Assembly (NCBI RefSeq): GCF_000143415.4
Contig: NW_003314294.1
Coordinates: 1,044,416 to 1,108,415 of the forward strand
DNA from: Selaginella moellendorffii
Lineage: Eukaryota > Plantae > Lycopodiophyta
DNA: 64,000 nt
Reading direction: 5' to 3'
Part shown: positions 2,100 to 42,975 of the stretch, piece after piece
How positions within the stretch are numbered: position 1 is the stretch's first letter
How the letters are laid out: every line of letters begins with the position of its first letter
Made by a program: the position numbers and the translations under genes
The notes under the pieces: model-generated
Databases searched by the model: none
Seen by the model: only the letters and a program-made list of their open reading frames with translations
Told to the model about the DNA's origin: nothing

Positions 2100-3950
2100 T
2101 GAAACATTATAAATGTAGGTATATTTGGTGTTGATGTCAAGAAGTTTGAATGCATCTTTATCAATCATCACCATTGAATAGAGCTCCAAGAATCTAAATT
2201 TTCAACTTGAATCCATGGTTGCTTTGTTATCACACTCAATGAGAGCATCTATTTGTTAATCTAAACTAGAACTCTACCTTTGTTGTAGAAGCAGTTTCAT
2301 ACTTCAGTTTACTATTAAAAATGAATTACAAATACTGCAGGTTTAAAATCCTGCTACCACAAAATTCACTGTTATGAAGATATGAACACTTGCTTCAAAT
2401 TCTCCTTGTCACATAACTTTTTCCAAGTTGAAGGCCTGGATTTTACAGAGAGGAGTAAATTTCTGCTTGAAGATCCATTTGGTGGAGACCACTCTTCTAT
2501 CTTCTAGCAAATCTGCCAAACTCCAAGCATTGTTCTTCATAAGGGTATAATACTCTTCTTTCATTGCTCAGCACCATTGGGTAGCCTCCCGACTATACAT
2601 TGCTTCAGGAATTGTGAGAGGTTCTGGAGTCATCCATCGCTCAACTCCTGCAAAGTAGAAATCAGCTACACTGTTGGCAGGCATTCTTCCTCAAAGTTGA
2701 GGTGCTGGCAGACTCCAAAGCCAGATAACTTATGTGCCCAGATTTGGTTGAGTGAGAATGAGAAGGAGAGGAGTGAGAAGGTTCAGGAACCAAAGTGGAG
2801 GCTAGAGGAGAAGGAGGAGGATCCGTTGAAGACATTGTTCAGTACCACTGGTGAATCTGGAATAGGATCTGGTACTAGAGGCAATGGTAAACCTGGAGCT
2901 TGATTCACTTGAGTGTTTTCTGGAATAGAGAGAGGCTCCCCGTCAAGTAGCAGCAGCCAAGATGAGTTAGTAGAGGAATCACAAGAGATGATACCTCTAG
3001 AATGTGAAGTGAGAAGATGCTTGTACAACTTTTGCTCATCAAACAAACCATCTATGTTGTGCTTGATGGTGTGGGATTCCCAATAGGCTTTCATTTGCTC
3101 ACTGTAGCCAATGAGAACACAACAAGAGCTCTTGGGGTCCAATTTCTGTCACAGATCGTCAGGAACATGGGTGATGGAGATGGCTCGCTGCATGCTGGCA
3201 TGCCTCGATCTTTCTGATGCAAAGCAGTAGCCTATATACCTTACGAGCTGTGGATTGGGAAGAAACCTAGCATTGCTCACTTGCGCATCTTTGGTTGCGC
3301 TGCCTATGAGGTCCTATTTATACGCTTTGCAACTCCATTCTGTTGCGGGGTGTACCTGAAACAAAACTAGCACTGGATCCCTTCCCGTTCATAATAACAA
3401 AAGAATTCATTAGACAAGTACTTGCCACCACTGTCGTAGTGAAGAACTTGAAGCCATAAACCTATTGCCACCTCAACCTTTGCTTTGAAAAGCTAGAACA
3501 GCTGCATGACTTCAGATTTATGACGCATCAGCTTCACTACCACATTCCTTGTATATATGTTTCTGTGTGAAGGTGCATGGGTACACAATCATCCAAATGA
3601 ACCAGTGCTAACGCCTGTGTACAACAAATCTTGAGAAAGATTGCCGAGAAAGAACCACTTCTGGTTAACTCTTGAGCAAGCTCCTTGATTGATGCCATAG
3701 TTGAAGAGAAACAGCCTCCTTGGCTACTAAAGTGGCACTTGTTGGGATCACTGTGACGTTTAGCTTATATAGCCCACCACATCTACTGCCACTGGCAACC
3801 TCCTCCTATTGCTGGTCCAGTAACTAACAGCTGCTGCGACTGAAGATCACCCGATAGCCCTTGTCTATGATATCACTGGCAGACAACAGAATTTGGCTTG
3901 TTATTGGCACAAATACCTTCAGAGCTCTCTTGTAGGTAGTTGAACGATTA
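2100..3950 (-). mobile_element. Degenerate Ty1/copia remnant (integrase/RT fragments), duplicated at ~29700-31420
   Basis: Fragments 'MDPKSSCCVLIGYSEQMKAY', 'RRVVSTKWIFK' and QQNGVA-type integrase sequence, with many stops; near-identical to ~29700-31420. Confidence 0.8.
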
Positions 3951-11244: not shown

Positions 11245-11631
11245 TGTCAGGAATCCCCCAATTCTTGCCACATTCCTGACTCTTGCCAGATTCCTGACCT
11301 GCAGACCACATTCCTGATTCTCGGGACACTTCCCTATTCTTGACTCTCAAGACACTTCCCTATTCCTGACTCTCTGATTTCCTGTACGATTCCTGAGTCT
11401 CAAGCCACATTCCTAATATTGATGTGGCGCCTCCTCAACCTCAACTATATTTAAGCCGTCCTCGATCCAAGAGTGGTGAAGCTTCATCAACCTATAGTAT
11501 ATATAGGTTAGCCTTGTTCCATTTCTCCACAATCTGAATCAACGCCAGTCTAAAGCTTCTTCTTTGTTTCCACTAGCTTTTCTCTTTATCTTTTGCATTT
11601 TCCAGTCTTGATCTTGTTGGGGGTCTTGACA
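11245..11631 (+). repeat. 5' LTR (TGTCA...TGACA, 387 bp) of a Tf1/Tcn1-like gypsy element
   Basis: TG..CA inverted termini, TATATATA at 11498-11505, internal TTCCTGACTCTC-type repeats; the 3' part recurs at 14091-14301. Confidence 0.8.
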
Positions 11632-14094
11632 GTTTGATTCAGATTGTGCTTTTTGCTTTTGCTTTAACTCATTTTGATTATTTGATTGCCTTTGTCTTTT
11701 TTCCCTTTTTTTTTTCTTTCTTCTTGCCGATGGAGTCTCCAAGCCATCCTGATTTCTTTGCCGAAGTCCTTGCAAAAATCCAGTCTAAGAATACCGAGCT
11801 GAAGGTGACCCTTCTTCGCATGCAGCAGAAGCTTGCTTCACTTTCGGCTCAAGGATTTAGCAACGTTCCTGAGCTGAAGGTGAGTTTCCTGGCGAAATTT
11901 TTAGGCAAGCGTTCGGAGCTTCGCGGATTTCTGAACCAAATGGAGCTGATCTTTGCACTTCAACATCAGCGGTACCCCACTCCCGAGTCTCAAATCGGCG
12001 CAATTGGGACGTTGCTCAAAGGTGCAGCTTTGTCATGGTTTTCTCCTCTTCTGGAGAAGAGCATGAAAGGGGTCGTGGTTCCGGAGCTGATGGATCTTCA
12101 ATTGTTCAAAGAGAAGCTCGAAGCATGTTTTGGCGAGACGGATCGGGTTCGGGCTGCTACCACAAAGATGAGACGTCTCTCTCAAGGGTCTTGTCCTGCC
12201 TCGATCTACGCTGCAGAGTTCCAACTCCTTGCCTTGGACACTCAGTGGGATGAGTGGGCTTTGATTGACCAATTTCGTTTCGGCCTCAACAACGGTGTCA
12301 AGGATTTGTTGCTCACCATGGAGGATCCCAAGGACTTGTCAGACGCCATCAACAAAGCTATTTGATGTAACAATCGTCTCTTTGAACGTCGTCAGGAAAG
12401 TCGCCGTGCTGCTGTTTTTCTGTCCCAGACTCAGGAATCCCAGCTTGAGTCTCAGGGCATACTCTTGAACCTACTGCTCCGGTCCCGATGGATATTTTTG
12501 GTACTCCCCGACTCATTAGAGGGAAGTTGAGTCCTGCTGAGAAGCAACGTCAAATATCTCATAATCTTTGCCTCTACTGTGCTGATCCTAATCACAAAGC
12601 AGTTGTGTGTCCCAAGAAGCCTCCCCCACTGCTCGAGTTCACTCTGCCTCAAAGTTCACCTCTATTGCAGTCGGGAAACGACCTTGTCTAAATAGAGTAG
12701 GAGCTGTCTGTTTGGACTCCCTGAATAAAAAACACTTTTCTTCTTTATCAAGCTCCTCACCACCTTTCATCAAAGCCACCACCAATTCCCGCAACTTCTG
12801 CGTCCCATGCCTCCTTTCTTTCACCAGACAATCAGGACTCAAGGCTTTGACGCTACTGGACTCGGGTGCAACTTCCTACTTCATGGACATGGACTTTGCT
12901 GCCCGACATCACGTTCCTCTTTCTCCTACCATACAGGATCTGAGGGTTGAAGGCATCGGTGGGCATTTTGTGTCTCCATCTTCTGGACTTAGGGAAACGT
13001 TGCCCGTTCGAGTACACATCGAGTCCATTGTCACCGATATCGCATTCAACATCATTAACAGCAAGTCCTCCTCTGTGGTGCTTGGTCTTCCTTGGTTCCA
13101 ACTACATCAGCCTCAGATTTGTTGGAAGGAATTACAGCTCATCTCTCCCACATCACCATCTCCCACGGCTTCCCCTGTTGTTCATCGAGTCCGAATCAGG
13201 AAAAGTTCCCTAAACTCAAATCGGGGTTCTGTTCCTAACTCTACGAAGTTTTCACCCTCTTCTTTTTCCTCTCATCCATCTTACACTGGACAGTATCCTC
13301 ATTTTATCATTCCATTTAGTCGTACACCTCCTCCTATCTCCATAATCACTATGAAAGAACTCCTTCATAAAGAACCTATTTTTCTTTTTGCTTTGCATGT
13401 TTTTCCTGTCAGTCTTCCTGAGAAGTATCATGATTTTGGGGATGTGTTTGACAAGAAAAAAGCTAGTGTACTGCCTGTTTATCAGCCTTATGACTATCCC
13501 ATTGATTTACAGGAAGGAGCGTCACCTCCATGGGGGCCTATCTACGGGTTATCCCCGTCCGAGCTTAAGGCCCTCAAAGAGTACGTGGATAAAAACTTTG
13601 CCTCGGGGTACATTCAGCATTTGCAGTCCCCGGCTGGAGCGCCTGTCTTCTTTGTCAAGAAGAAGGATGGGAGTTTGCGGCTAGTCATCGATTACCGAGG
13701 TTTGAACAAGGTGACTATTCAAAACTGTTATCCGCTGCCCCTGATCTCAAACCTGTTGGAACGCCTCGGCGGTGCCCACTTCTTCACCAAGATTGACCTC
13801 CGTGGCGCATACAACCTGATCCGGATCCGGCTTGGTGATGAATGGAAGACTGCGTTCTTAACTCGCTATGGCCACTTCGAGTACACTATCATGCCATTTG
13901 GCTTGACAAATGCTCCAGCAGTTTTCCAACACATGGCGAACGATGTCTTTCGAGAGTTTCTTGATCAGATGGTGATCGTCTACCTTGATGACATCCTCAT
14001 CTACTCAAAAACTCAGGAGGAGCATGACAAACATGTACGCAAGGTGCTGGCAAAGCTGCGAGAACACGGCCTATACGCGAAGCTTGAGAAATGT
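11245..14094 (+). mobile_element. Ty3/gypsy copy 1 (gag with premature stops, protease, RT truncated)
   Basis: gag ORF 11634-12365; pol 12607-14094 with LLDSGA protease, [17 protein letters not shown] and VYLDD RT motifs. Confidence 0.92.
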
Positions 14095-36140: not shown

Positions 36141-37738
36141 TCGTTATAGATCAGTACGCTTTGATTCCGGTTCTCGTTTTCTCTTTGGGGCCCGTTTACA
36201 GAGCTCGTGGACGACTTGTGGAAGAAGAAGGAGATGCCAAATGCAAAGAGGGCCATACTCTCTCGCTCGCCAGGGCCCAAAGATGGATTCTTTGAGACTT
36301 TCCATACATGGAGGTATGGTTGCTTTCTCTTTCTCTTTTTTTGTTTTCTTTTTCTCCTGTCTGTTCCACTGTTCACTGTGAGCAGCAGTGATTGACGCTT
36401 GCTACTCGTAGATGGCCAAACGCCGCGCTAGGCACGAAGCTCCAAATCGATCCTTTGGAGTGACGCGGCGAATCAATCAATCTTTTTTTCTCTCCAGTGG
36501 CATGAGCTTTCGCGATTGACTGGACGTGTAGATGAGCAGTGCCCGACCACTGTGAGCAATGCATTGTCTATGATACTGCACGAGCAGTGGCAGGCAGCGT
36601 GGTCTGCTCAGCTGTTTAGCTCCACGACGTTTACTACGAAAGAGATTCGCGGCTGCGAGTGACGCAAAGCTGGTACTATTACTTTCCTCTCGTCTTTGTT
36701 ACCGGCAACCACGTTTTTTGTGCTGGTTTCCTTCTGACGCACTTGGTTTTTTCAAATGTTTTCCCAGATGCTCGTCTCTCTCCTCGATAGTTGCGACGAG
36801 TCATTTGTTTTGTTCCCGGAAGGCGGTGCCTGCGACTAAAACAAATCGATCAGCGTCACGAACAGACCTCCAGGACCGAGGCGAGCGAAGCAACAAGTTG
36901 GCGGCCATCGCAATCAGGTCCTGGAGCACGGATGATTTGGCCCCTGACGCGGACGATTGACGAGCTGAGGTGGTGCAGTATATATTGTGTTTGTGGAAAG
37001 ATAAAGAGGTACGTGGTTTTGCTTTCCTCTCTGCTTCTTTCGCCATAGCCTGGGAAAGCAGACAAAGTGGTGTCTCTCGCTTGGCAGGGAAGAGGGTCCT
37101 TTGTTTGCTGCTGACGCTTCCATATGAGTCAAATATCAGCAGTAAATCGTCAGCACAGTGCGAACTCCACATGGCAAAGGTGCAGCCGCAGCAATCCTTG
37201 CAGCTTTATTCCAATGACTCCCATCGAGTCCTCAGAAGAAAAAAAACCAGTCAATTTCCTCGAGAGCAGGCTAAGCTCCAAGGTACCTTTTGTTTTATAG
37301 ATCGATCGCTCTCTTCTCCCATGGTTTATAGATCGATCGCTCTCTTTACAAGTGGTGGCTTTGATTCCAGATCCAGATCGAGGGCGATTGCCATCGGAAA
37401 ACAATGCCCTGGCGGAGATTTTTTCCATGGATAATCGATCAAATGATATAGAATTTACAGGCACCGATGGAGCGATCGGGCGATATCTACAGCGAGCGAT
37501 CGATGGAGCTGGAGAGCGTCTCATCGTCGCCAGTGAAAATAATGGCACCTAACAGGGGCTCATGGGTTCCTTTCGTGGCGGCCGTTCGTAGCATGTGATT
37601 CAAATGGGTGACGTTATTCCCGCGAATATGCGCTTTGACCCTTGGGTTGGAGGGAATCGAACCGGCGGTTGTGGTGTTAACCGGGGTTAGGGTCCCTTTC
37701 CAACGCTGCTACGGTGCTACAGTGCGCGGTTGCCCCTT

Positions 37739-37745
37739 TTTATAA
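37739..37745 (+). promoter_or_regulatory. Candidate TATA box of the SAMDC-ODC gene
   Basis: TTTATAA upstream of a purine-rich leader; plausible leader intron 37832 (GT) to 38118 (AG) ends 10 nt before the tiny uORF. Confidence 0.45.
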
Positions 37746-38127
37746 CGCGGGCACCAAAAGCATTCCAAGAAGAAGAGAGAGCGTTCTTGACGGAAGCGGC
37801 GTAGGCGACGGCGGCAGCGTCTTGGCGCAAGGTTTGATTCTTTGGTTTCTCTCATCGGCGCCGGCGCGCGATCTTAGATCGCCGCCTCGCAATCGGCGAA
37901 TTCGCCTCTTTTCTCTCTGTTGCATGCGCCGATTCATCGATTGATCGCTGGTTTCGTGGCTCCTGTGCTGCGCAGGCTTGGATTCGTGCGATATTTCGTC
38001 CTGGGGAAAGGCGAGGATCCGGTTTTCTTCACATTCGAGTAGGAAATTTTTTGGCGTGGTTTGGATTGGAATGGGACTCATCCCTTGCTCTTGTGTGGTG
38101 TGCTTCTTCTTCTTCCAGGCGGATTGA

Positions 38128-38136
38128 ATGTTTTAA
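38128..38136 (+). promoter_or_regulatory. SAMDC 'tiny' uORF (ATG TTT TAA) overlapping the small uORF start by 1 nt
   Basis: ATGTTTTAATG: the last A of the stop is the A of the small uORF ATG, the hallmark plant SAMDC arrangement. Confidence 0.9.
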
Positions 38137-38353
38137 TGGCGTCGACGCGTGATTCTAGTAAATCTAAACGCGACTCTGTCCAATACGAGTCTCCTCTCGG
38201 CTACAAGATTGAGGACATCAGGCCTGACGGTGATATTGAAAAGTTCCGCTGCGCTGCCTACTCAAACGTAAGCTCCTTTGTTTTCTTTGCGAGAAATGCG
38301 TCGCGAGCTAATTCGTCTCTTCTTCTTTGCAGTTCGTCCGAAAACCATCCTGA
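38136..38353 (+). CDS. SAMDC 'small' conserved-peptide uORF, 50 aa; exons 38136-38267 and 38333-38353
   Basis: MASTRDSSKSKRDSVQYESPLGYKIEDIRPDGDIEKFRCAAYSN|FVRKPS* matches the plant YEAPLGYxIEDxRPxGGIxKFxSAAYSN..KPS consensus; 65-nt GTAAG..TGCAG intron after YSN. Confidence 0.93.
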
Positions 38354-38575
38354 TACCCCCCAGAAAGAAGAGCCAGTAGAGTAGGCTAGGGCCTTCCCCT
38401 CGTCAAATCCTTTGCTTGGAGTCTCCTTTACCTCTTGGAGCTGGTCTGCGGCATGCTGCACGGTGGCAGATCAGCTCCCTGCTCTCGGGAGCAGCATTCT
38501 TCCCGCTAGCTAGCTAGCTCTTTAGCCGGTCTCTCCTCTCTTTTTTCTCCCCTCCGTCTCCTCTCACAAGCCAAG

Positions 38576-41047
38576 ATGGGTGTCTCTTTCATTCCCGCTG
38601 ATGAAGTCATGGAGCCTGTTGTTGCCAGTCCTGGGTTTGAGGGGTTTGAGAAGAGGCTTGAGGTGGAATTCTGGGATCCTCTTGGTTTTGCCAATCCGAG
38701 TGGTCTGCGAGCAATCCCCCGCAATGAGATTGACACCATGCTGTCAGCGGCCGAGTGCACTATTGTCTCTGCTTTGAGCAACAGTCAGTTTGATTCCTAC
38801 GTGCTGTCTGAGTCAAGCCTCTTCGTCTATCCTTCCAAAATCGTCATCAAAACCTGTGGAACCACGCAGCTCTTGAAGGCCATCCCCCTGCTTCTCAAGT
38901 CGGCCTCGTTTATCTCCCTGGAAGCCTGCCGCTGCAAGTATAGCCGAGGAACTTTTATCTTTCCCAGTGCCCAGCCTTCGCCTTATGGAAACTTTAACGA
39001 GGAGGTGGTGATCCTGGAGAAGTACTTTGGTCACCTTGGAAACGGAGGCAAGGCTTGCGTCATGAGTGACGCCTCTAAGATGCACAACTGGCACGTTTAT
39101 GTTGCTGCGTCGGAAGTGGCCCCCTTGAGCTCTGAGACATACACAATGGAGATGTGCATGACGCAGCTTGATCGCTCTTCGGCAGCTCTCTTCTACAAGT
39201 CGCCGTTCTACCGGTCAGCTGCTGACATGACTCTCCTGTCCGGCATCCGGAACCTCCTGCCTCACTCGGAGATATGCGACTTTGCCTTTGATCCCTGCGG
39301 CTACTCAATGAACAGCGTCGAAGGCAACGCCCACTCGACCATACACATAACTCCGGAGGATGGTTTCAGCTACGCAAGTTTCGAGACCATGGGTTACAGC
39401 CCGAGCATGCTCGACTTGGGAAGCTTGGTGGACAGAGTGCTCGGCTGTTTCAAACCGGCAGTTTTCAGCATCTCGCTCTCGACGGCTGGACTCTGCCACT
39501 CACAGGACGCTGGGTCCTGGGGGGTGCCGGTTTGTCCACGAGGCTACGTGTGCAGTGGGACTACTCGCCATGAAATGCCCGGGGGGAGCTTCGTGGTGTA
39601 CCACACTTATACGAGGATCTTAGGTGGCGACTCGACAGTGATGCCGCTTGCTCTGTTCCCGGCACTGGAGAAGGTGGCGAGCAATGGTTACAAGAGCAAG
39701 AACAGCGAAGCATCTTTGAAGCCGTTTCTGTACGGTGTGCAGCCCTTACGTGAAAGTGGTGGGGCGGAGGTCATCGGTCCTACTGCCAGGGACATGGATT
39801 CATTCATCAGGAAGAAGATCCAGTCCACGGGCCGAGAGGATGCGTTCTATGTTCTTGACTTGGCAACTGTTACTAGGCTGTGGAAGATTTGGAAGTCGGC
39901 CATGCCGAGAGTTCACCCCTTCTACGCGGTCAAGTGCAACCCCGACCCGCAGCTCCTGTCCATGCTGGCGGCACTGGGAGCCGGTTTCGACGTTGCGAGC
40001 AAGGCAGAGCTGGAAGCTGTGACACAACTCGGGGTGGCGCCACGAAACATTATATTTGCGAATCCCTGCAAGCTTCCTTCGCATATCACTGAAGCTGCTA
40101 AGGCGGGGGTGGTGTACACGACGTTTGATTCCGAGGGAGAGCTCTACAAGCTTAAGAAGTACCATCCACAGGCGGAGGTTCTCCTGAGGTTCCGTGCCGA
40201 CGACACCGGTGCTCGCTGCCCGCTGGGCGTCAAGTATGGTGCCGAGTGGGACGAGTGCTATCATCTGCTGGAGGTGGCCAAGACGCTGGGCATCAAAGTC
40301 GCAGGTGTGGCCTTCCACGTCGGGAGCGGTGCCTCGGACGTGAATGCCTTTGCGGAGGGCATCAAAGCCGCGAGGAAGCTGTTCGACATGGCCGAGAGCT
40401 TGGGTCTCCCGAGGATGACAATGCTGGACATCGGTGGCGGGTTCGTGTCGGATGGAGGAGCCGGGGTCAAGTTCGCGGCCGCGGCGTACGAGATTGGCAA
40501 CGCGCTGGAGGAGCACTTCCCGCGGGAGACGATGGCGGACGTGAGGATCATCGGCGAGCCGGGCAGGTTCTTCGCGGAGGAGGCCTTCAGCCTGGCGGTG
40601 CTCGTGTTTGGCTGCCGGGTCCGGAGGCGCGAGGAAGGCAACAAGACGGTGGTTGAGTACTGGATCAACGATGGCATCTACGGCTCCATGAATTGCTTGC
40701 TGTACGACCACGCAACGCTCTCGGTACGGGCGCTTCCAGTGGCGAGCAGTGGCGGTGGCAGCAGTGGTAGCAGCAGCGGCAGTGATTGCGAAAGCTCGTC
40801 CGAGGATGAGGAGGACGATGCGCCGCTGCTGGACGTGGAGCTCCATCCCTCCATCATCTTTGGGCCGACATGCGATGGACTGGACACGGTGCTGAGCGAT
40901 GTGTGGCTTCCGCGGCTCCAGTGTGGGGACTGGCTCGTGTTCCCTCGCATGGGGGCTTACACCAAGAGCGCTGGATCCAGCTTCAATGGCTTCGCGGTTC
41001 CAGACGCTACGTTCTACGTTCACTGTGGAGCAGCGCCAGAGATGTGA
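38576..41047 (+). CDS. SAMDC-ODC: Bifunctional S-adenosylmethionine decarboxylase - ornithine decarboxylase fusion, 823 aa, no introns
   Basis: SAMDC (~aa 1-347): GFEGFEKRLE, YVLSE|SSLFV (E79/S80 autocleavage), IKTCGTT, FDPCGYSMN, TIHITPEDGFSYASFE. ODC (~aa 400-820): PFYAVKCNP (PLP Lys453), FDVAS, IFANPCK, FHVGSG, LDIGGGF, EPGRFF, NDGIYGSMNCLLYDHA, GPTCDGLD (Cys766), GAYT, FNGF. Confidence 0.95.
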   Translation: MGVSFIPADEVMEPVVASPGFEGFEKRLEVEFWDPLGFANPSGLRAIPRNEIDTMLSAAECTIVSALSNSQFDSYVLSESSLFVYPSKIVIKTCGTTQLLKAIPLLLKSASFISLEACRCKYSRGTFIFPSAQPSPYGNFNEEVVILEKYFGHLGNGGKACVMSDASKMHNWHVYVAASEVAPLSSETYTMEMCMTQLDRSSAALFYKSPFYRSAADMTLLSGIRNLLPHSEICDFAFDPCGYSMNSVEGNAHSTIHITPEDGFSYASFETMGYSPSMLDLGSLVDRVLGCFKPAVFSISLSTAGLCHSQDAGSWGVPVCPRGYVCSGTTRHEMPGGSFVVYHTYTRILGGDSTVMPLALFPALEKVASNGYKSKNSEASLKPFLYGVQPLRESGGAEVIGPTARDMDSFIRKKIQSTGREDAFYVLDLATVTRLWKIWKSAMPRVHPFYAVKCNPDPQLLSMLAALGAGFDVASKAELEAVTQLGVAPRNIIFANPCKLPSHITEAAKAGVVYTTFDSEGELYKLKKYHPQAEVLLRFRADDTGARCPLGVKYGAEWDECYHLLEVAKTLGIKVAGVAFHVGSGASDVNAFAEGIKAARKLFDMAESLGLPRMTMLDIGGGFVSDGGAGVKFAAAAYEIGNALEEHFPRETMADVRIIGEPGRFFAEEAFSLAVLVFGCRVRRREEGNKTVVEYWINDGIYGSMNCLLYDHATLSVRALPVASSGGGSSGSSSGSDCESSSEDEEDDAPLLDVELHPSIIFGPTCDGLDTVLSDVWLPRLQCGDWLVFPRMGAYTKSAGSSFNGFAVPDATFYVHCGAAPEM

Positions 41048-41295
41048 TCGTTCGTCCGAGTTTTTCTTGTGTGTTTCTTTTTTCCGGGGAGCGTTTGATC
41101 GGTTTTGAGGCGCTCCTCGCGTTTTCGTTTCTTTTCCTTGTTTGCTTCTTTCTTTGAAAAATAAAATTTGTAGTTTAGGATATCCGTTTGCTGCCACGTC
41201 AGAAGATTGACAGCCACGTCAGAAGTGAAGATGATGACCAGGAACGTCGTTGACTATGACAAGGACCAGATGAGTCAGCCCTAATATTTGAAAGG

Positions 41296-42975
41296 TCAAA
41301 CGACTCCAGCCGCGACTGAGACATACGACGGAGGATCTTGGGGCTTGAGCGCCAGTAGCTCTTTTGCTGCTTGTTCCGCAAGGTCTCGGTTGCTGTAACG
41401 TTTGCATGCCGCGAGCAGCGAAGCCCACTCCACGTCGTTTGGAAGGAATGGCATGGTTTGGATGAGATCCATGGCGTCGTCGAGCTTTCCGGCCCGTCCC
41501 AGCAGATCGACCATGCAGCAAAAGTGCTCCCTCAGCGGCTCCACCTCGTGGTCCGATTGCATCGCCACGATATGGTGGCGGGCGTCGTCCACGCTTCCCT
41601 TGTGGGTGCACGCCACGAGAATGGCCGCGAAGGAGACCGCGTTGGGTCTCACCCCGGTCTGCATCATCTCCCGGAAGAGATGGCCGGCCACGTCGCTGAA
41701 TTCGCCGCTGTGGGCGAGCGCTCCCACCATCGCGTTCCACGACACGAGATTCCTCTCGGGCATTTGCTCGAACGTGAGCTTGGCGTCGCTCGTGGCTCCG
41801 TTTCGAGCGTAGCCAGCGAGGAGGGTGTTCCAGGAGACTGTGCTCCACTCGGGCATCCGATCGAACGCGAGCTTGGAATCCAAGACCCGTCCCGCCAGAG
41901 CATAGGCTCCCAGCAGCGTCGTCCATGTCACGACACTCTTGGGCTCGGAAACTCTATCAAACAGTGCCTTTGCTTGCGAGAGTTTTCCACTCACGGCACA
42001 CGCCTGAATCATCGCGTTCCACGAGCAGATGTTCTTGTCGGGGATGGAGTCGAAGGTGGCTTTGGCTCGATCGTAGTCTCCTGCATTTGCATACACCGCC
42101 AGCAGCGTCGTCCACGACACAACGCTCTTTTCCGGGATGGATTCGAACAAGATTCTCACTTCGTCGTGGGCTTCCGCGTCCGTGCATGCCTGCAGCATCG
42201 AATTCCAAGACACCACGCTTCTGCAGGGCATTCTCTCAAACACTGCTTTCGAGAGATCCAAATCTCCGGTTGCGGCACTCGCTGCGAGCATTGCGTTCCA
42301 GCACACAGAATCCCTTGAAGGCATTTCAACCAGACAATTCCAAGCATCGCCCATCTTGCCGTTTTGTGCATAGCCAGTCAACATAGCCGTCCATGAAACA
42401 ACATTCTTCTCAGGCATACTGTCAAAAATGGCTTTTGCCGCTTGCAAATGCCCTTTTCCGGCAAATGCAGTAACAATGATCGTCGACGACACTGCACACC
42501 ACCTTGGCATTCTATAGTACACTAAATTTGCATGAAAGAGTTCATCATTCTGTGTGAAACCTCGTATTAGTGCGTTCCACGACACGTTGTCTCGCTTTTT
42601 TAGGCCCCTAAAGAGCTGCTCTGCCTTGTAAATTTGCCCACCTTGGGCATATGCTGTTATCATCGCGTTTGAGGCCACCACGCTGCGATCCGGCATTGTG
42701 TCGTAAACCTCCTTGGCCTTGTCCATGTCGCCGTTGCTTGTGTAGGCACCGAGCATGATACTCCACGAGAAATCGTTCTTCGGATCGATGGCATCGAACA
42801 CCTGCCTTGCCTCGCTTGGGCTCCCACACTTGCCATACATTTGCACCAGGAGATTTGCCAGGAAGCGATTGAGGCATTGGCGGCTCTGGATTCGATCGTG
42901 AACACGCCGCAGCTCGTCCAGGTTCTTGATGTTCTTGAGAATCCCTGCAAAGAATGCCTGCCCTGAGGTTCCCAT
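41296..42975 (-). CDS. PLS-class pentatricopeptide repeat protein, 559 aa, ending in a partial E domain
   Basis: About 14 tandem PPR motifs (VVSWTAMLTGYAQNG etc.), HFCCMVDLLGRAGKL, MPFLPNDVEWASLLAAC. Confidence 0.93.
   Translation of the reverse strand: MGTSGQAFFAGILKNIKNLDELRRVHDRIQSRQCLNRFLANLLVQMYGKCGSPSEARQVFDAIDPKNDFSWSIMLGAYTSNGDMDKAKEVYDTMPDRSVVASNAMITAYAQGGQIYKAEQLFRGLKKRDNVSWNALIRGFTQNDELFHANLVYYRMPRWCAVSSTIIVTAFAGKGHLQAAKAIFDSMPEKNVVSWTAMLTGYAQNGKMGDAWNCLVEMPSRDSVCWNAMLAASAATGDLDLSKAVFERMPCRSVVSWNSMLQACTDAEAHDEVRILFESIPEKSVVSWTTLLAVYANAGDYDRAKATFDSIPDKNICSWNAMIQACAVSGKLSQAKALFDRVSEPKSVVTWTTLLGAYALAGRVLDSKLAFDRMPEWSTVSWNTLLAGYARNGATSDAKLTFEQMPERNLVSWNAMVGALAHSGEFSDVAGHLFREMMQTGVRPNAVSFAAILVACTHKGSVDDARHHIVAMQSDHEVEPLREHFCCMVDLLGRAGKLDDAMDLIQTMPFLPNDVEWASLLAACKRYSNRDLAEQAAKELLALKPQDPPSYVSVAAGVV

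What the first reader, a model, noticed from the sequence alone, without database searches (positions are those of the whole stretch)
38128..38353. ODC placed under the plant SAMDC tiny/small uORF polyamine switch
Seen in sequence: the tiny uORF ATG-TTT-TAA overlaps by one base the ATG of a spliced 50-aa conserved-peptide uORF, ending 222 nt upstream of the fusion ATG. Established knowledge: in angiosperms this cassette represses SAMDC translation when polyamines are high, and plants have no known antizyme to control ODC. Inference: the fusion gives ODC a polyamine-responsive translational feedback loop, so one sensor would throttle both putrescine and dcSAM supply. The peptide departs from consensus at normally conserved sites (GDIEKFRC for GGIKKFxS; N-FVRKPS for N-CxxKPS), which may retune its sensitivity.
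Basis: partly seen in the sequence, partly recalled or inferred. Interest (0 to 1): 0.8.

Follow-up and report, generated by a model that had tools for sequence, protein, structure and literature searches.

The report
SAMDC uORF switch on SAMDC-ODC fusion
In the spikemoss Selaginella, one messenger RNA carries the classic plant polyamine-sensing pair of tiny upstream reading frames in front of a single gene that makes two polyamine enzymes (SAMDC and ODC) as one protein, and the same layout turns out to be old and widespread in green algae, liverworts and ferns.

Summary
The tiny uORF ATG-TTT-TAA (38128-38136) shares one base with the ATG of a small uORF (38136-38267 plus 38333-38353).

- **Intron:** the 65-nt GT..AG intron is spliced in all four RNA runs laid.
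- **Peptide:** the spliced 50-aa peptide matches Pfam PF08132 (AdoMetDC_leader) at E=2e-21.
- **Transcript:** one 3.1-kb RNA contig joins both uORFs to the whole intron-less 823-aa SAMDC+ODC ORF (38576-41047).
- **Genome:** Selaginella moellendorffii.

It rests on homology and was not tested.

This is not a Selaginella innovation. A leader-peptide uORF precedes SAMDC-ODC fusion genes in every other species examined: Marchantia, Adiantum, Klebsormidium, Chlorokybus, Closterium, Trebouxia, three transcript contigs of unnamed species, and more weakly Micractinium. Wherever the DNA could be read, the intron sits at the same place.

The peptide's departures from consensus are real. GG→GD is unique among 149 representatives, and S→C and C→F are rare.

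Two extra uORFs and an alternatively retained leader intron complicate the switch. I found no paper in the held library describing this arrangement.

The parts
38010..38038 (+). First leader exon; apparent 5' end of the transcript
   Evidence: RNA contigs of runs X1 and X2 both begin at 38010. Depth is 0 over 37711-37984 in all four runs.
38039..38118 (+). Alternative leader intron (GT..AG, 80 nt) ending 9 nt before the tiny uORF
   Evidence: The joint 38038->38119 is seen in X7, with matching loose ends in X12. The intron is retained in the X1 and X2 contigs. A 3' splice site sits at the same place in Marchantia and in unfused Selaginella paralog L003.
38071..38127 (+). uORF0: 18 codons, present only in the intron-retaining isoform; its stop abuts the tiny uORF ATG
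   Evidence: AUG context attggaATGg (G at -3, G at +4).
38128..38136 (+). Tiny uORF ATG TTT TAA (Met-Phe-stop), weak AUG context (U at -3, U at +4)
   Evidence: The core ATGTTnTrATGG is conserved in Marchantia, L005 and Selaginella L003.
38136..38267 (+). Small uORF exon 1 (44 codons); its ATG overlaps the tiny uORF stop by one base
38268..38332 (+). 65-nt GT..AG intron inside the small uORF, phase 0, six codons before its stop
   Evidence: Spliced in 4 of 4 RNA runs. Same position in Marchantia, Klebsormidium, Trebouxia, Micractinium and both unfused Selaginella paralogs.
38333..38353 (+). Small uORF exon 2: FVRKPS plus TGA, with the penultimate proline kept
   Evidence: No sequence variants here in any RNA run.
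38453..38509 (+). uORF3: 18 codons between the small uORF and the main ATG, ending 66 nt before it
   Evidence: Absent from the orthologous mRNA leaders L005, L006 and L010.
38576..41047 (+). Main ORF: intron-less 823-aa SAMDC-ODC fusion; strong AUG context gccaagATGg
   Evidence: A single RNA contig spans 38010-41182.
38633..39610 (+). SAMDC (AdoMetDC) domain, residues 20-345, with the LSES/SLF self-processing site
   Evidence: Pfam PF01536, E=1e-103. The potato SAMDC alpha chain 1MHM aligns from the processing serine, E=2e-83.
39857..40954 (+). ODC domain, residues 428-793, with the PFYAVKCN lysine, DIGGGF and GPTCDGLD motifs
   Evidence: Pfam PF02784 and PF00278. Aligned to T. brucei and human ODC, E=1e-103 and 1e-96.
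41048..41182 (+). 3' UTR (minimum extent)
   Evidence: The X2 contig ends at 41182. The X1 and X7 contigs run on past 41400.

Best explanation
This is the 5' leader of the Selaginella moellendorffii SAMDC-ODC fusion mRNA, and it carries a genuine plant SAMDC-type dual-uORF translational sensor.

**Expected working, by homology with Arabidopsis-type SAMDC leaders.** Scanning 43S complexes meet the weak-context tiny uORF AUG first.
- At low polyamine many ribosomes initiate there. They terminate after two codons, which hides the overlapping small-uORF AUG, resume scanning, and reinitiate downstream at the strong main AUG.
- At high polyamine the tiny AUG is skipped and the small uORF is translated. 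Its conserved nascent peptide (...YESPLGYKIEDIRP.G..KF..AAYSN..RKPS) arrests the ribosome at its stop codon, blocks downstream initiation, and probably destabilises the mRNA.

The main ORF encodes SAMDC and ODC in one polypeptide, so the makers of both spermidine-synthase substrates (dcSAM and putrescine) would be repressed together, in fixed 1:1 stoichiometry.

**Shown:** the anatomy, the splicing, co-linearity on one mRNA, family membership, and conservation of the layout across green plants.
**Inferred:** the polyamine response, the arrest, and enzymatic activity of both domains.
For: - **Family membership.** Pfam PF08132 at 75.9 bits, E=2e-21. An own profile built from 59 leader peptides scores the window at E=4e-20.
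- **Anatomy.** One-base tiny/small overlap, 50 codons, penultimate proline. This matches the description in Ivanov, Atkins & Michael 2010, PMC2811004.
- **RNA.** The intron is spliced in 4 of 4 runs. A 3108-nt contig covers 38010-38267 plus 38333-41182 with no other intron. Depth over the uORFs is at least that over the ORF.
- **AUG order and context**. In the fully spliced leader the tiny and small AUGs are the first two AUGs. Contexts are weak for tiny (U-3/U+4), better for small (G+4), and strong for main (A-3/G+4).
- **Conservation in front of fusion genes.**
  - Marchantia: ATGTTATAATGG and a 51-aa peptide.
  - mRNA contigs L005/L006, L009 and L010: ML* or MI* tiny uORFs. L005, L006 and L010 have only these two uAUGs in leaders of 507-714 nt.
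  - Adiantum and Klebsormidium: separately called PF08132 genes just upstream.
  - Chlorokybus and Closterium: gene models with the leader peptide spliced on.
  - Trebouxia, E=8e-10, and Micractinium, weak but ending CVKKPS*, both with the same intron position.
- **Catalytic motifs.** Both domains keep their hallmark motifs against solved structures.
- **Mechanism in relatives.** Polyamine-dependent ribosomal arrest by plant SAMDC uORF peptides is summarised in PMC5587730.
Against: - No functional data exist for this gene.
- The peptide carries D where 146 of 149 representatives have G. It has F where spliced relatives have C, and C where S or T is usual. Its N-terminus lacks the usual KGG(K)n-S run. 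Any of these could weaken or abolish arrest.
- The small-uORF AUG has U at -3, where Marchantia, L005, L009 and L010 have A. The contrast between tiny and small AUG strength is therefore smaller here.
- uORF3 (38453-38509) lies in the reinitiation path and is not conserved.
- The intron-retaining isoform puts a strong-context uORF0 directly in front of the tiny AUG. Part of the mRNA pool may therefore bypass the sensor or load it differently.
- Contigs do not map a cap site, so minor downstream transcription starts are not excluded.
Confidence: 0.75

Rival explanations
1. Degenerating or constitutive uORF. The cassette is inherited, but in Selaginella it no longer senses polyamines. The unique G->D and rare C->F changes have disabled peptide-dependent arrest. 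The leader then acts only as a fixed, sequence-independent damper through its uORFs, or polyamine control has moved to the unfused SAMDC paralogs.
For: - Unique or rare substitutions at near-invariant columns.
- Weaker small-uORF AUG context and an extra non-conserved uORF3.
- Two other SAMDC genes with their own uORFs exist in the genome.
Against: - The reading frame, one-base overlap, splice sites, penultimate proline and the invariant YE.PLGY.IEDIRP / KF..AAYSN core are all intact. The peptide scores three times the Pfam cut-off.
- Exon 1 of the peptide is identical in the second haplotype model P0241, and no variants occur in exon 2 in four RNA runs.
- The uORFs of the unfused Selaginella paralogs are more diverged than this one (GGFEKLRRAGFTV; HGLTDVF).
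Confidence: 0.17
2. Bypassed switch. Most functional mRNA avoids the sensor, either through a downstream transcription start or through the intron-retaining isoform. In that isoform uORF0 captures ribosomes and releases them too close to the tiny and small AUGs to reinitiate there. Isoform choice, rather than polyamine level, would then set output.
For: - Both isoforms are assembled in different RNA libraries: retained in X1 and X2, spliced in X7 and X12.
- uORF0 has a strong context and ends at 38127, immediately before the tiny AUG.
- In the X1 allele a 2-nt deletion puts uORF0 in frame with the small uORF.
Against: - The uORF region is covered at least as deeply as the ORF in all four runs, and no contig starts between the uORFs and the main ATG.
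- The leader intron and its acceptor just upstream of the tiny uORF are conserved, which suggests that the spliced form is the norm.
- Contig data cannot quantify isoforms.
Confidence: 0.06
3. Artefact. The fusion ORF, or its link to the uORFs, comes from mis-assembly or from read-through between two adjacent genes.
For: None found. Considered only because SAMDC-ODC fusions are usually described as a Plasmodium peculiarity.
Against: - A single RNA contig spans the uORFs and the whole 2.47-kb ORF.
- A 99%-identical 820-aa protein is annotated on another scaffold of the same species.
- All 120 listed full-length matches in other green plants carry both SAMDC and ODC domains.
Confidence: 0.01

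Closest known systems
Arabidopsis/angiosperm SAMDC (AdoMetDC1) tiny + small uORF pair (CPuORF homology group of SAMDC; Pfam PF08132)
   Same: - A 2-3 codon tiny uORF overlaps a 48-55 codon small uORF by one nucleotide.
- Conserved peptide core and a C-terminal ..KPS-stop with penultimate proline.
- An intron inside the small uORF near its 3' end.
- A SAMDC domain encoded downstream.
   Different: - The main ORF also encodes ODC.
- The peptide has D33, C40 and F45 at near-invariant columns and a non-canonical N-terminus.
- There are extra uORFs and an alternative leader intron.
- Function is untested here.
Plasmodium falciparum bifunctional AdoMetDC/ODC
   Same: One polypeptide with SAMDC at the N-terminus and ODC at the C-terminus, joined by a linker. 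The domain order is from my own knowledge; the reviews listed call the Plasmodium enzyme bifunctional AdoMetDC.
   Different: - The green-plant protein is about 800-950 aa, without the large parasite-specific inserts.
- It is preceded by the plant-type leader peptide uORF.
- Common ancestry with the Plasmodium fusion was not tested.
ODC antizyme (+1 frameshift) feedback of animals and fungi
   Same: A polyamine-sensing translational event that lowers ODC activity when polyamines are high. This is an analogy of logic only.
   Different: - Antizyme is a separate protein that targets ODC for degradation.
- Here control would act on synthesis of ODC itself, through uORFs.
- No antizyme is known in plants (own knowledge).
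Mammalian AdoMetDC MAGDIS uORF and the non-AUG upstream conserved coding region of ODC/AZIN1 mRNAs
   Same: Polyamine-dependent ribosome stalling at or near termination of a uORF in the leader of a polyamine-pathway mRNA (PMC2811004).
   Different: The peptides are unrelated, each is a single uORF rather than an overlapping pair, and their evolutionary origins are separate.

Membership tests
Plant SAMDC dual uORF cassette (tiny + small uORF; PF08132 AdoMetDC_leader) | Small-uORF peptide matches the AdoMetDC_leader profile above the curated cut-off | tested here: met
   75.9 bits against a cut-off of 25, E=2.1e-21, profile positions 10-51 of 51.
Plant SAMDC dual uORF cassette (tiny + small uORF; PF08132 AdoMetDC_leader) | Small uORF of 48-55 codons with a penultimate proline | tested here: met
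   50 codons, ending K-P-S-stop. Criterion taken from PMC2811004.
Plant SAMDC dual uORF cassette (tiny + small uORF; PF08132 AdoMetDC_leader) | Tiny uORF of 2-3 codons whose stop overlaps the small-uORF AUG by one nucleotide | tested here: met
   ATG TTT TAA at 38128-38136, small-uORF ATG at 38136. The core is conserved in orthologs.
Plant SAMDC dual uORF cassette (tiny + small uORF; PF08132 AdoMetDC_leader) | Both uORFs lie in the 5' leader of a mature mRNA that encodes SAMDC | tested here: met
   An RNA contig runs from 38010 to 41182 with the 65-nt intron removed. The SAM_decarbox domain scores E=1e-103.
Plant SAMDC dual uORF cassette (tiny + small uORF; PF08132 AdoMetDC_leader) | Tiny AUG in weaker initiation context than the small-uORF AUG | tested here: inconclusive
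   Tiny has U-3/U+4 and small has U-3/G+4, so the difference rests on +4 only. Orthologs have A-3/G+4 at the small AUG.
Plant SAMDC dual uORF cassette (tiny + small uORF; PF08132 AdoMetDC_leader) | Polyamine-responsive, peptide-sequence-dependent repression of the main ORF | not testable with these tools
   Needs reporter assays, toeprinting or Ribo-seq.
Bifunctional SAMDC-ODC fusion enzymes | SAMDC and eukaryotic-type ODC domains in one uninterrupted ORF, SAMDC first | tested here: met
   823-aa ORF with PF01536 at residues 20-345 and PF02784/PF00278 at 428-793. Transcribed as one unit.
Bifunctional SAMDC-ODC fusion enzymes | Catalytic signatures of both enzymes retained | tested here: met
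   ES|S processing site aligned to the start of the 1MHM alpha chain. PLP-lysine motif PFYAVKCN, DIGGGF and GPTCDGLD aligned to 1F3T. Activity itself was not assayed.
Bifunctional SAMDC-ODC fusion enzymes | Common descent with the Plasmodium fusion | not tested

The most novel reading that the evidence does not exclude
The uORF-guarded SAMDC-ODC fusion is the ancestral polyamine gene of green plants (Viridiplantae). The leader-peptide sensor would then have controlled both decarboxylases together from the start. The familiar unfused, uORF-bearing SAMDC genes of land plants, including angiosperms, would descend from it by duplication and loss of the ODC half. Seed plants and mosses would have lost the fusion itself.

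In a SAMDC-domain tree rooted on chlorophyte fusions, all sampled land-plant unfused SAMDCs nest inside the streptophyte fusion clade. The uORF intron position and the C..PS-stop tail are shared by chlorophyte and streptophyte fusion genes.

**Caveats.** No unfused algal SAMDC was sampled. Some 'unfused' rows may be truncated gene models. The group for the AU test was named after the tree had been seen.
Probability: 0.4. Interest if true: 0.75.

Novelty: new variant of a known kind. Interest (0 to 1): 0.6.

Why it matters
How plants regulate ODC without an antizyme is an open question. Here, in non-seed plants and green algae, ODC is physically tied to SAMDC and sits behind the best-understood polyamine-sensing leader in plants.

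If the leader works as it does in Arabidopsis, it would deliver co-ordinated 1:1 feedback on both substrates of spermidine synthase. Marchantia, where genetic tools exist, has the same layout and could be used to test this.

The finding also recasts the SAMDC uORF pair as a regulator that may have evolved on a bifunctional gene. It shows as well that SAMDC-ODC fusions are not a Plasmodium oddity.

The natural D33 and F45 variants give ready-made probes for which residues of the arrest peptide matter.

Tried and rejected
- **Word-index search with the 50-aa peptide.** It returned only two proteins: the unspliced Selaginella model SELMODRAFT_134748 and a Diphasiastrum 50-mer. The exhaustive profile search was needed to get 279 relatives.
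- **Literature.** Ten full-text searches and several paper look-ups found no description of a green-plant SAMDC-ODC fusion or of the uORFs in front of one. Green et al. 2011 (PMC3196669) is not held. Fuell et al. 2010 was never looked up. The supplements of PMC2811004 are not held. Prior description elsewhere therefore cannot be excluded.
- **Simple regex scan.** It missed the chlorophyte uORFs. A profile built from 59 peptides found Trebouxia (E=8e-10) and only weakly Micractinium (E=0.2-0.3).
- **Failed look-ups.** Ceratopteris P0025 and Diphasiastrum P0134 returned no record. Adiantum DNA was too large to fetch, so only its gene table was used.
- **Artefact hypothesis.** Mis-assembly or read-through was rejected on the RNA contig and the orthologs.
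- **Hidden ODC next to the unfused Selaginella SAMDC genes.** Rejected: tblastn finds none within 4 kb.
- **Earlier scan notes.** They contain nothing further on polyamine genes in this genome.

Full report
**1. What is in the sequence**

Reading window 37600-39400 shows ATG-TTT-TAA at 38128-38136. The last A of that stop is the first base of an ATG at 38136.

That frame reads 44 codons, MASTRDSSKSKRDSVQYESPLGYKIEDIRPDGDIEKFRCAAYSN, up to 38267. A GTAAGC donor follows. After the acceptor ...TTTGCAG, which ends at 38332, the frame continues FVRKPS-stop through 38353.

The stop ends 222 nt before the ATG at 38576. That ATG opens an uninterrupted 823-codon ORF running to 41047.

Pfam finds three domains in the ORF:
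- SAM_decarbox at residues 20-345, E=1e-103.
- Orn_Arg_deC_N at residues 430-667, E=1e-72.
- Orn_DAP_Arg_deC, extending to residue 793, E=1e-15.

Against solved structures:
- The N-terminal half aligns with potato SAMDC (1MHM, E=2e-83), starting at the serine of the ES|S self-processing site.
- The C-terminal half aligns with T. brucei and human ODC (E=1e-103 and 1e-96). It keeps the PFYAVKCN lysine motif, DIGGGF and GPTCDGLD.

**2. Is it more than chance, and is it expressed as proposed?**

The spliced 50-aa peptide scores 75.9 bits (cut-off 25, E=2.1e-21) against Pfam PF08132, the S-adenosylmethionine decarboxylase leader peptide. The match includes the six residues that exist only after splicing.

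The best protein match to the main ORF is a 99%-identical 820-aa protein of Selaginella moellendorffii. This identifies the genome.

I laid Logan contigs of four RNA libraries from four studies on 37300-41400.
- All four show the joint 38267->38333 (65 nt, GT..AG).
- One 3108-nt contig (run X2) covers 38010-38267 plus 38333-41182. It therefore holds both uORFs, the 222-nt spacer, the whole fusion ORF and at least 135 nt of 3' UTR on one molecule, with no further intron.
- The contigs of X1 and X2 both start at 38010, and depth is zero over 37711-37984 in all runs.
- The uORF region is covered at least as deeply as the ORF.

These data do not meet it, although contigs do not map cap sites.

**3.

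*An alternative leader intron.* A second leader intron, 38039-38118 (GT..AG), ends 9 nt before the tiny uORF. It is spliced in X7 and, judging by loose ends, in X12. It is retained in the X1 and X2 contigs.

*uORF0 in the retained form.* The retained form adds an 18-codon uORF0 (38071-38127) in strong AUG context. Its stop directly abuts the tiny AUG.

*An allele that fuses uORF0 to the small uORF.* The allele seen in X1 carries a 2-nt deletion at 38092. This shifts uORF0 into the small-uORF frame and would give an N-terminally extended leader peptide that bypasses the tiny uORF.

*uORF3.* Another 18-codon uORF (38453-38509) lies between the small uORF and the main ATG.

*AUG order and context.* In the fully spliced leader the order of AUGs is tiny, small, uORF3, main.

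| AUG | -3 | +4 |
|---|---|---|
| Tiny uORF | U | U |
| Small uORF | U | G |
| Main ORF | A | G |

**4. Relatives**

The fusion is not peculiar to Selaginella. The 120 best full-length matches all carry SAMDC plus ODC domains. The named species among them are:
- Liverworts: Marchantia, Riccia, Calypogeia.
- Ferns: Adiantum, Ceratopteris.
- Streptophyte algae: Mesotaenium, Spirogloea, Klebsormidium, Closterium, Chlorokybus, Mesostigma.
- Chlorophytes: Trebouxia, Micractinium, Coccomyxa, Bryopsis, Tetraselmis, Cymbomonas.

No seed plant or moss appears among the named entries.

I then examined what lies upstream of the fusion genes.

| Species / locus | What precedes the fusion ORF |
|---|---|
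| Marchantia (L001) | ATGTTATAATGG; 51-aa peptide ending AAYSN\|CVRKPS*; intron at the same codon boundary |
| mRNA contigs L005/L006, L009, L010 (unnamed species) | ML* or MI* tiny uORFs overlapping 47-69-codon small uORFs by one base. In L005, L006 and L010 these are the only two upstream AUGs in leaders of 507-714 nt |
| Adiantum | A separate PF08132 gene called just upstream |
| Klebsormidium | A separate PF08132 gene called just upstream; a 12-codon first uORF overlaps by one base; the peptide ends CLKAPS* |
| Chlorokybus, Closterium | Gene models have the leader peptide wrongly spliced onto the enzyme |
| Trebouxia | ...AYGD\|CCKEPS*, profile E=8e-10; same intron position, no one-base tiny uORF |
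| Micractinium | ...GFCD\|CVKKPS*, weak match; same intron position, no one-base tiny uORF |

The absence of a one-base tiny uORF in the two chlorophytes agrees with the published statement that the tiny uORF is missing in Chlorella and prasinophytes (PMC2811004).

Selaginella also has two truly unfused SAMDC paralogs. No ODC-like sequence lies within 4 kb of either. Each has its own small uORF, and both are more diverged than the one studied here.

**5. The departures from consensus**

An exhaustive profile search found 279 leader peptides. The columns in question, counted on 149 of the best 150:

| Column | Residues seen | This gene |
|---|---|---|
| Second G of GG | G 146, E 2, D 1 | D (the only one) |
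| S of KF.S | S 130, T 16, C 2, F 1 | C |
| First residue after the intron (spliced entries) | C 66 | F |

The other cysteine at the KF.S column belongs to the lycophyte Diphasiastrum (FRCAAYSNCVRKPS), so C looks like a lycophyte trait. One other F after the intron was seen, in P0380.

The N-terminus also lacks the usual ME.KGGKK-Ser-run. The invariant core and the KPS-stop tail are kept.

Exon 1 of the peptide is identical in the second haplotype's model P0241. No variant occurs in exon 2 in the RNA runs. Whether these changes retune, weaken or do nothing is unknown.

**6. How it most likely works**

The model comes from established work on angiosperm SAMDC, summarised in PMC2811004 and PMC5587730.
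- At low polyamine, ribosomes use the tiny uORF. This occludes the small-uORF AUG, and they reinitiate at the main ORF.
- At high polyamine, they skip the weak tiny AUG and translate the small uORF. Its nascent peptide arrests the ribosome at termination and shuts off downstream initiation. In Arabidopsis this also triggers mRNA decay (Uchiyama-Kadokura et al. 2014, cited).

Every structural requirement is present here, and the main ORF makes SAMDC and ODC as one chain. The most probable function is therefore joint, stoichiometric feedback on the dcSAM and putrescine supply from this gene.

I put this at about 0.75. The remaining probability goes to three alternatives:
- A degenerate or constitutive uORF.
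- Bypass through isoform or start-site choice.
- An assembly or read-through artefact, which is essentially excluded.

The claim that one sensor throttles both supplies needs qualifying. Two unfused SAMDC genes exist. An arginine route to putrescine is expected in land plants from general knowledge, though I did not check it here.

**7. Evolutionary reading (tentative)**

I built a SAMDC-domain tree of 21 fused and 17 unfused sequences, rooted on chlorophyte fusions.
- All land-plant unfused SAMDCs fall inside the streptophyte fusion clade (quick tree, embryophyte node SH-aLRT 95).
- The careful tree agrees in outline, but its deep nodes have low bootstrap support.
- An AU test rejects monophyly of the unfused set (p=9e-6).

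Together with the shared uORF intron position, this suggests that the uORF-guarded fusion is ancestral in green plants. Unfused SAMDC genes would then have arisen from it.

Caveats: some short 'unfused' models may be truncated annotations, no algal unfused SAMDC was sampled, and the test group was named after seeing the tree.

**8. Comparison with what is known, and novelty**

The cassette is a member of the known plant SAMDC dual-uORF family; the membership table gives the details. The enzyme resembles the Plasmodium bifunctional AdoMetDC/ODC in domain order.

What appears undescribed, at least in the held library, is the combination: the SAMDC leader sensor governing a bifunctional SAMDC-ODC ORF, and its conservation from chlorophytes to ferns. 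Ten full-text searches found nothing on it. Green et al. 2011 is not held, and Fuell et al. 2010 was not looked up.

I class it as a new variant of a known kind, with interest 0.6. This report confirms it.

Noticed in passing
window 38039-38127: An alternatively retained 80-nt leader intron carries a strong-context 18-codon uORF0 whose stop abuts the tiny uORF AUG. In the allele seen in run X1 (C>T at 38088, 2-nt deletion at 38092), uORF0 shifts into the small-uORF frame. This would give a 71-aa N-terminally extended leader peptide that bypasses the tiny uORF.
   Followed up: partly
window 38453-38509: A non-conserved 18-codon uORF (MLHGGRSAPCSREQHSSR) lies between the small uORF and the main ATG. 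It is absent from the orthologous mRNA leaders L005, L006 and L010.
   Followed up: partly
L001, L002, L003, L004, L007, L008 and window 38268-38332: The intron inside the small uORF sits at the same phase-0 position in all these loci, six codons before the stop, and the residue after it is Cys. The loci run from chlorophytes (Trebouxia, Micractinium) through Klebsormidium and Marchantia to Selaginella, and include both fused and unfused genes. The one exception to the Cys is the Phe of the Selaginella fusion gene.
   Followed up: yes
proteins P0001-P0120; tree: SAMDC-ODC fusion proteins are widespread in Viridiplantae, and no seed plant or moss appears among the named entries of the 120 best hits. 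Land-plant unfused SAMDCs nest within the fusion clade, which hints that they derive from the fusion.
   Followed up: partly
L004 3680-3940 (Selaginella unfused SAMDC, 'proenzyme 3'): The leader differs from the canonical layout. A longer first uORF ends one base before the small-uORF ATG at 3731 instead of overlapping it. There is also an in-frame upstream ATG at 3692, and the peptide core is diverged (HGLTDVF).
   Followed up: partly
P0134 / P0242 (Diphasiastrum complanatum O6H91_06G066100 and 06G066000): The SAMDC closest to the Selaginella fusion's SAMDC half is annotated as only 343 aa, with no ODC domain. It lies beside a 50-aa leader-peptide gene. This is either a truncated model of a fusion gene or a recent fission. 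The DNA could not be fetched.
   Followed up: partly
window 41296-42975 (- strand): A convergent 559-aa PPR-repeat gene (PF01535, E=6e-80) ends about 250 nt from the fusion ORF's stop. Some RNA contigs run from the fusion 3' UTR on past 41400, so the 3' ends of the two transcripts may overlap.
   Followed up: no
window 11498-11648: An earlier scan note (s1-333002) flags a gypsy LTR self-priming signal here.
   Followed up: no
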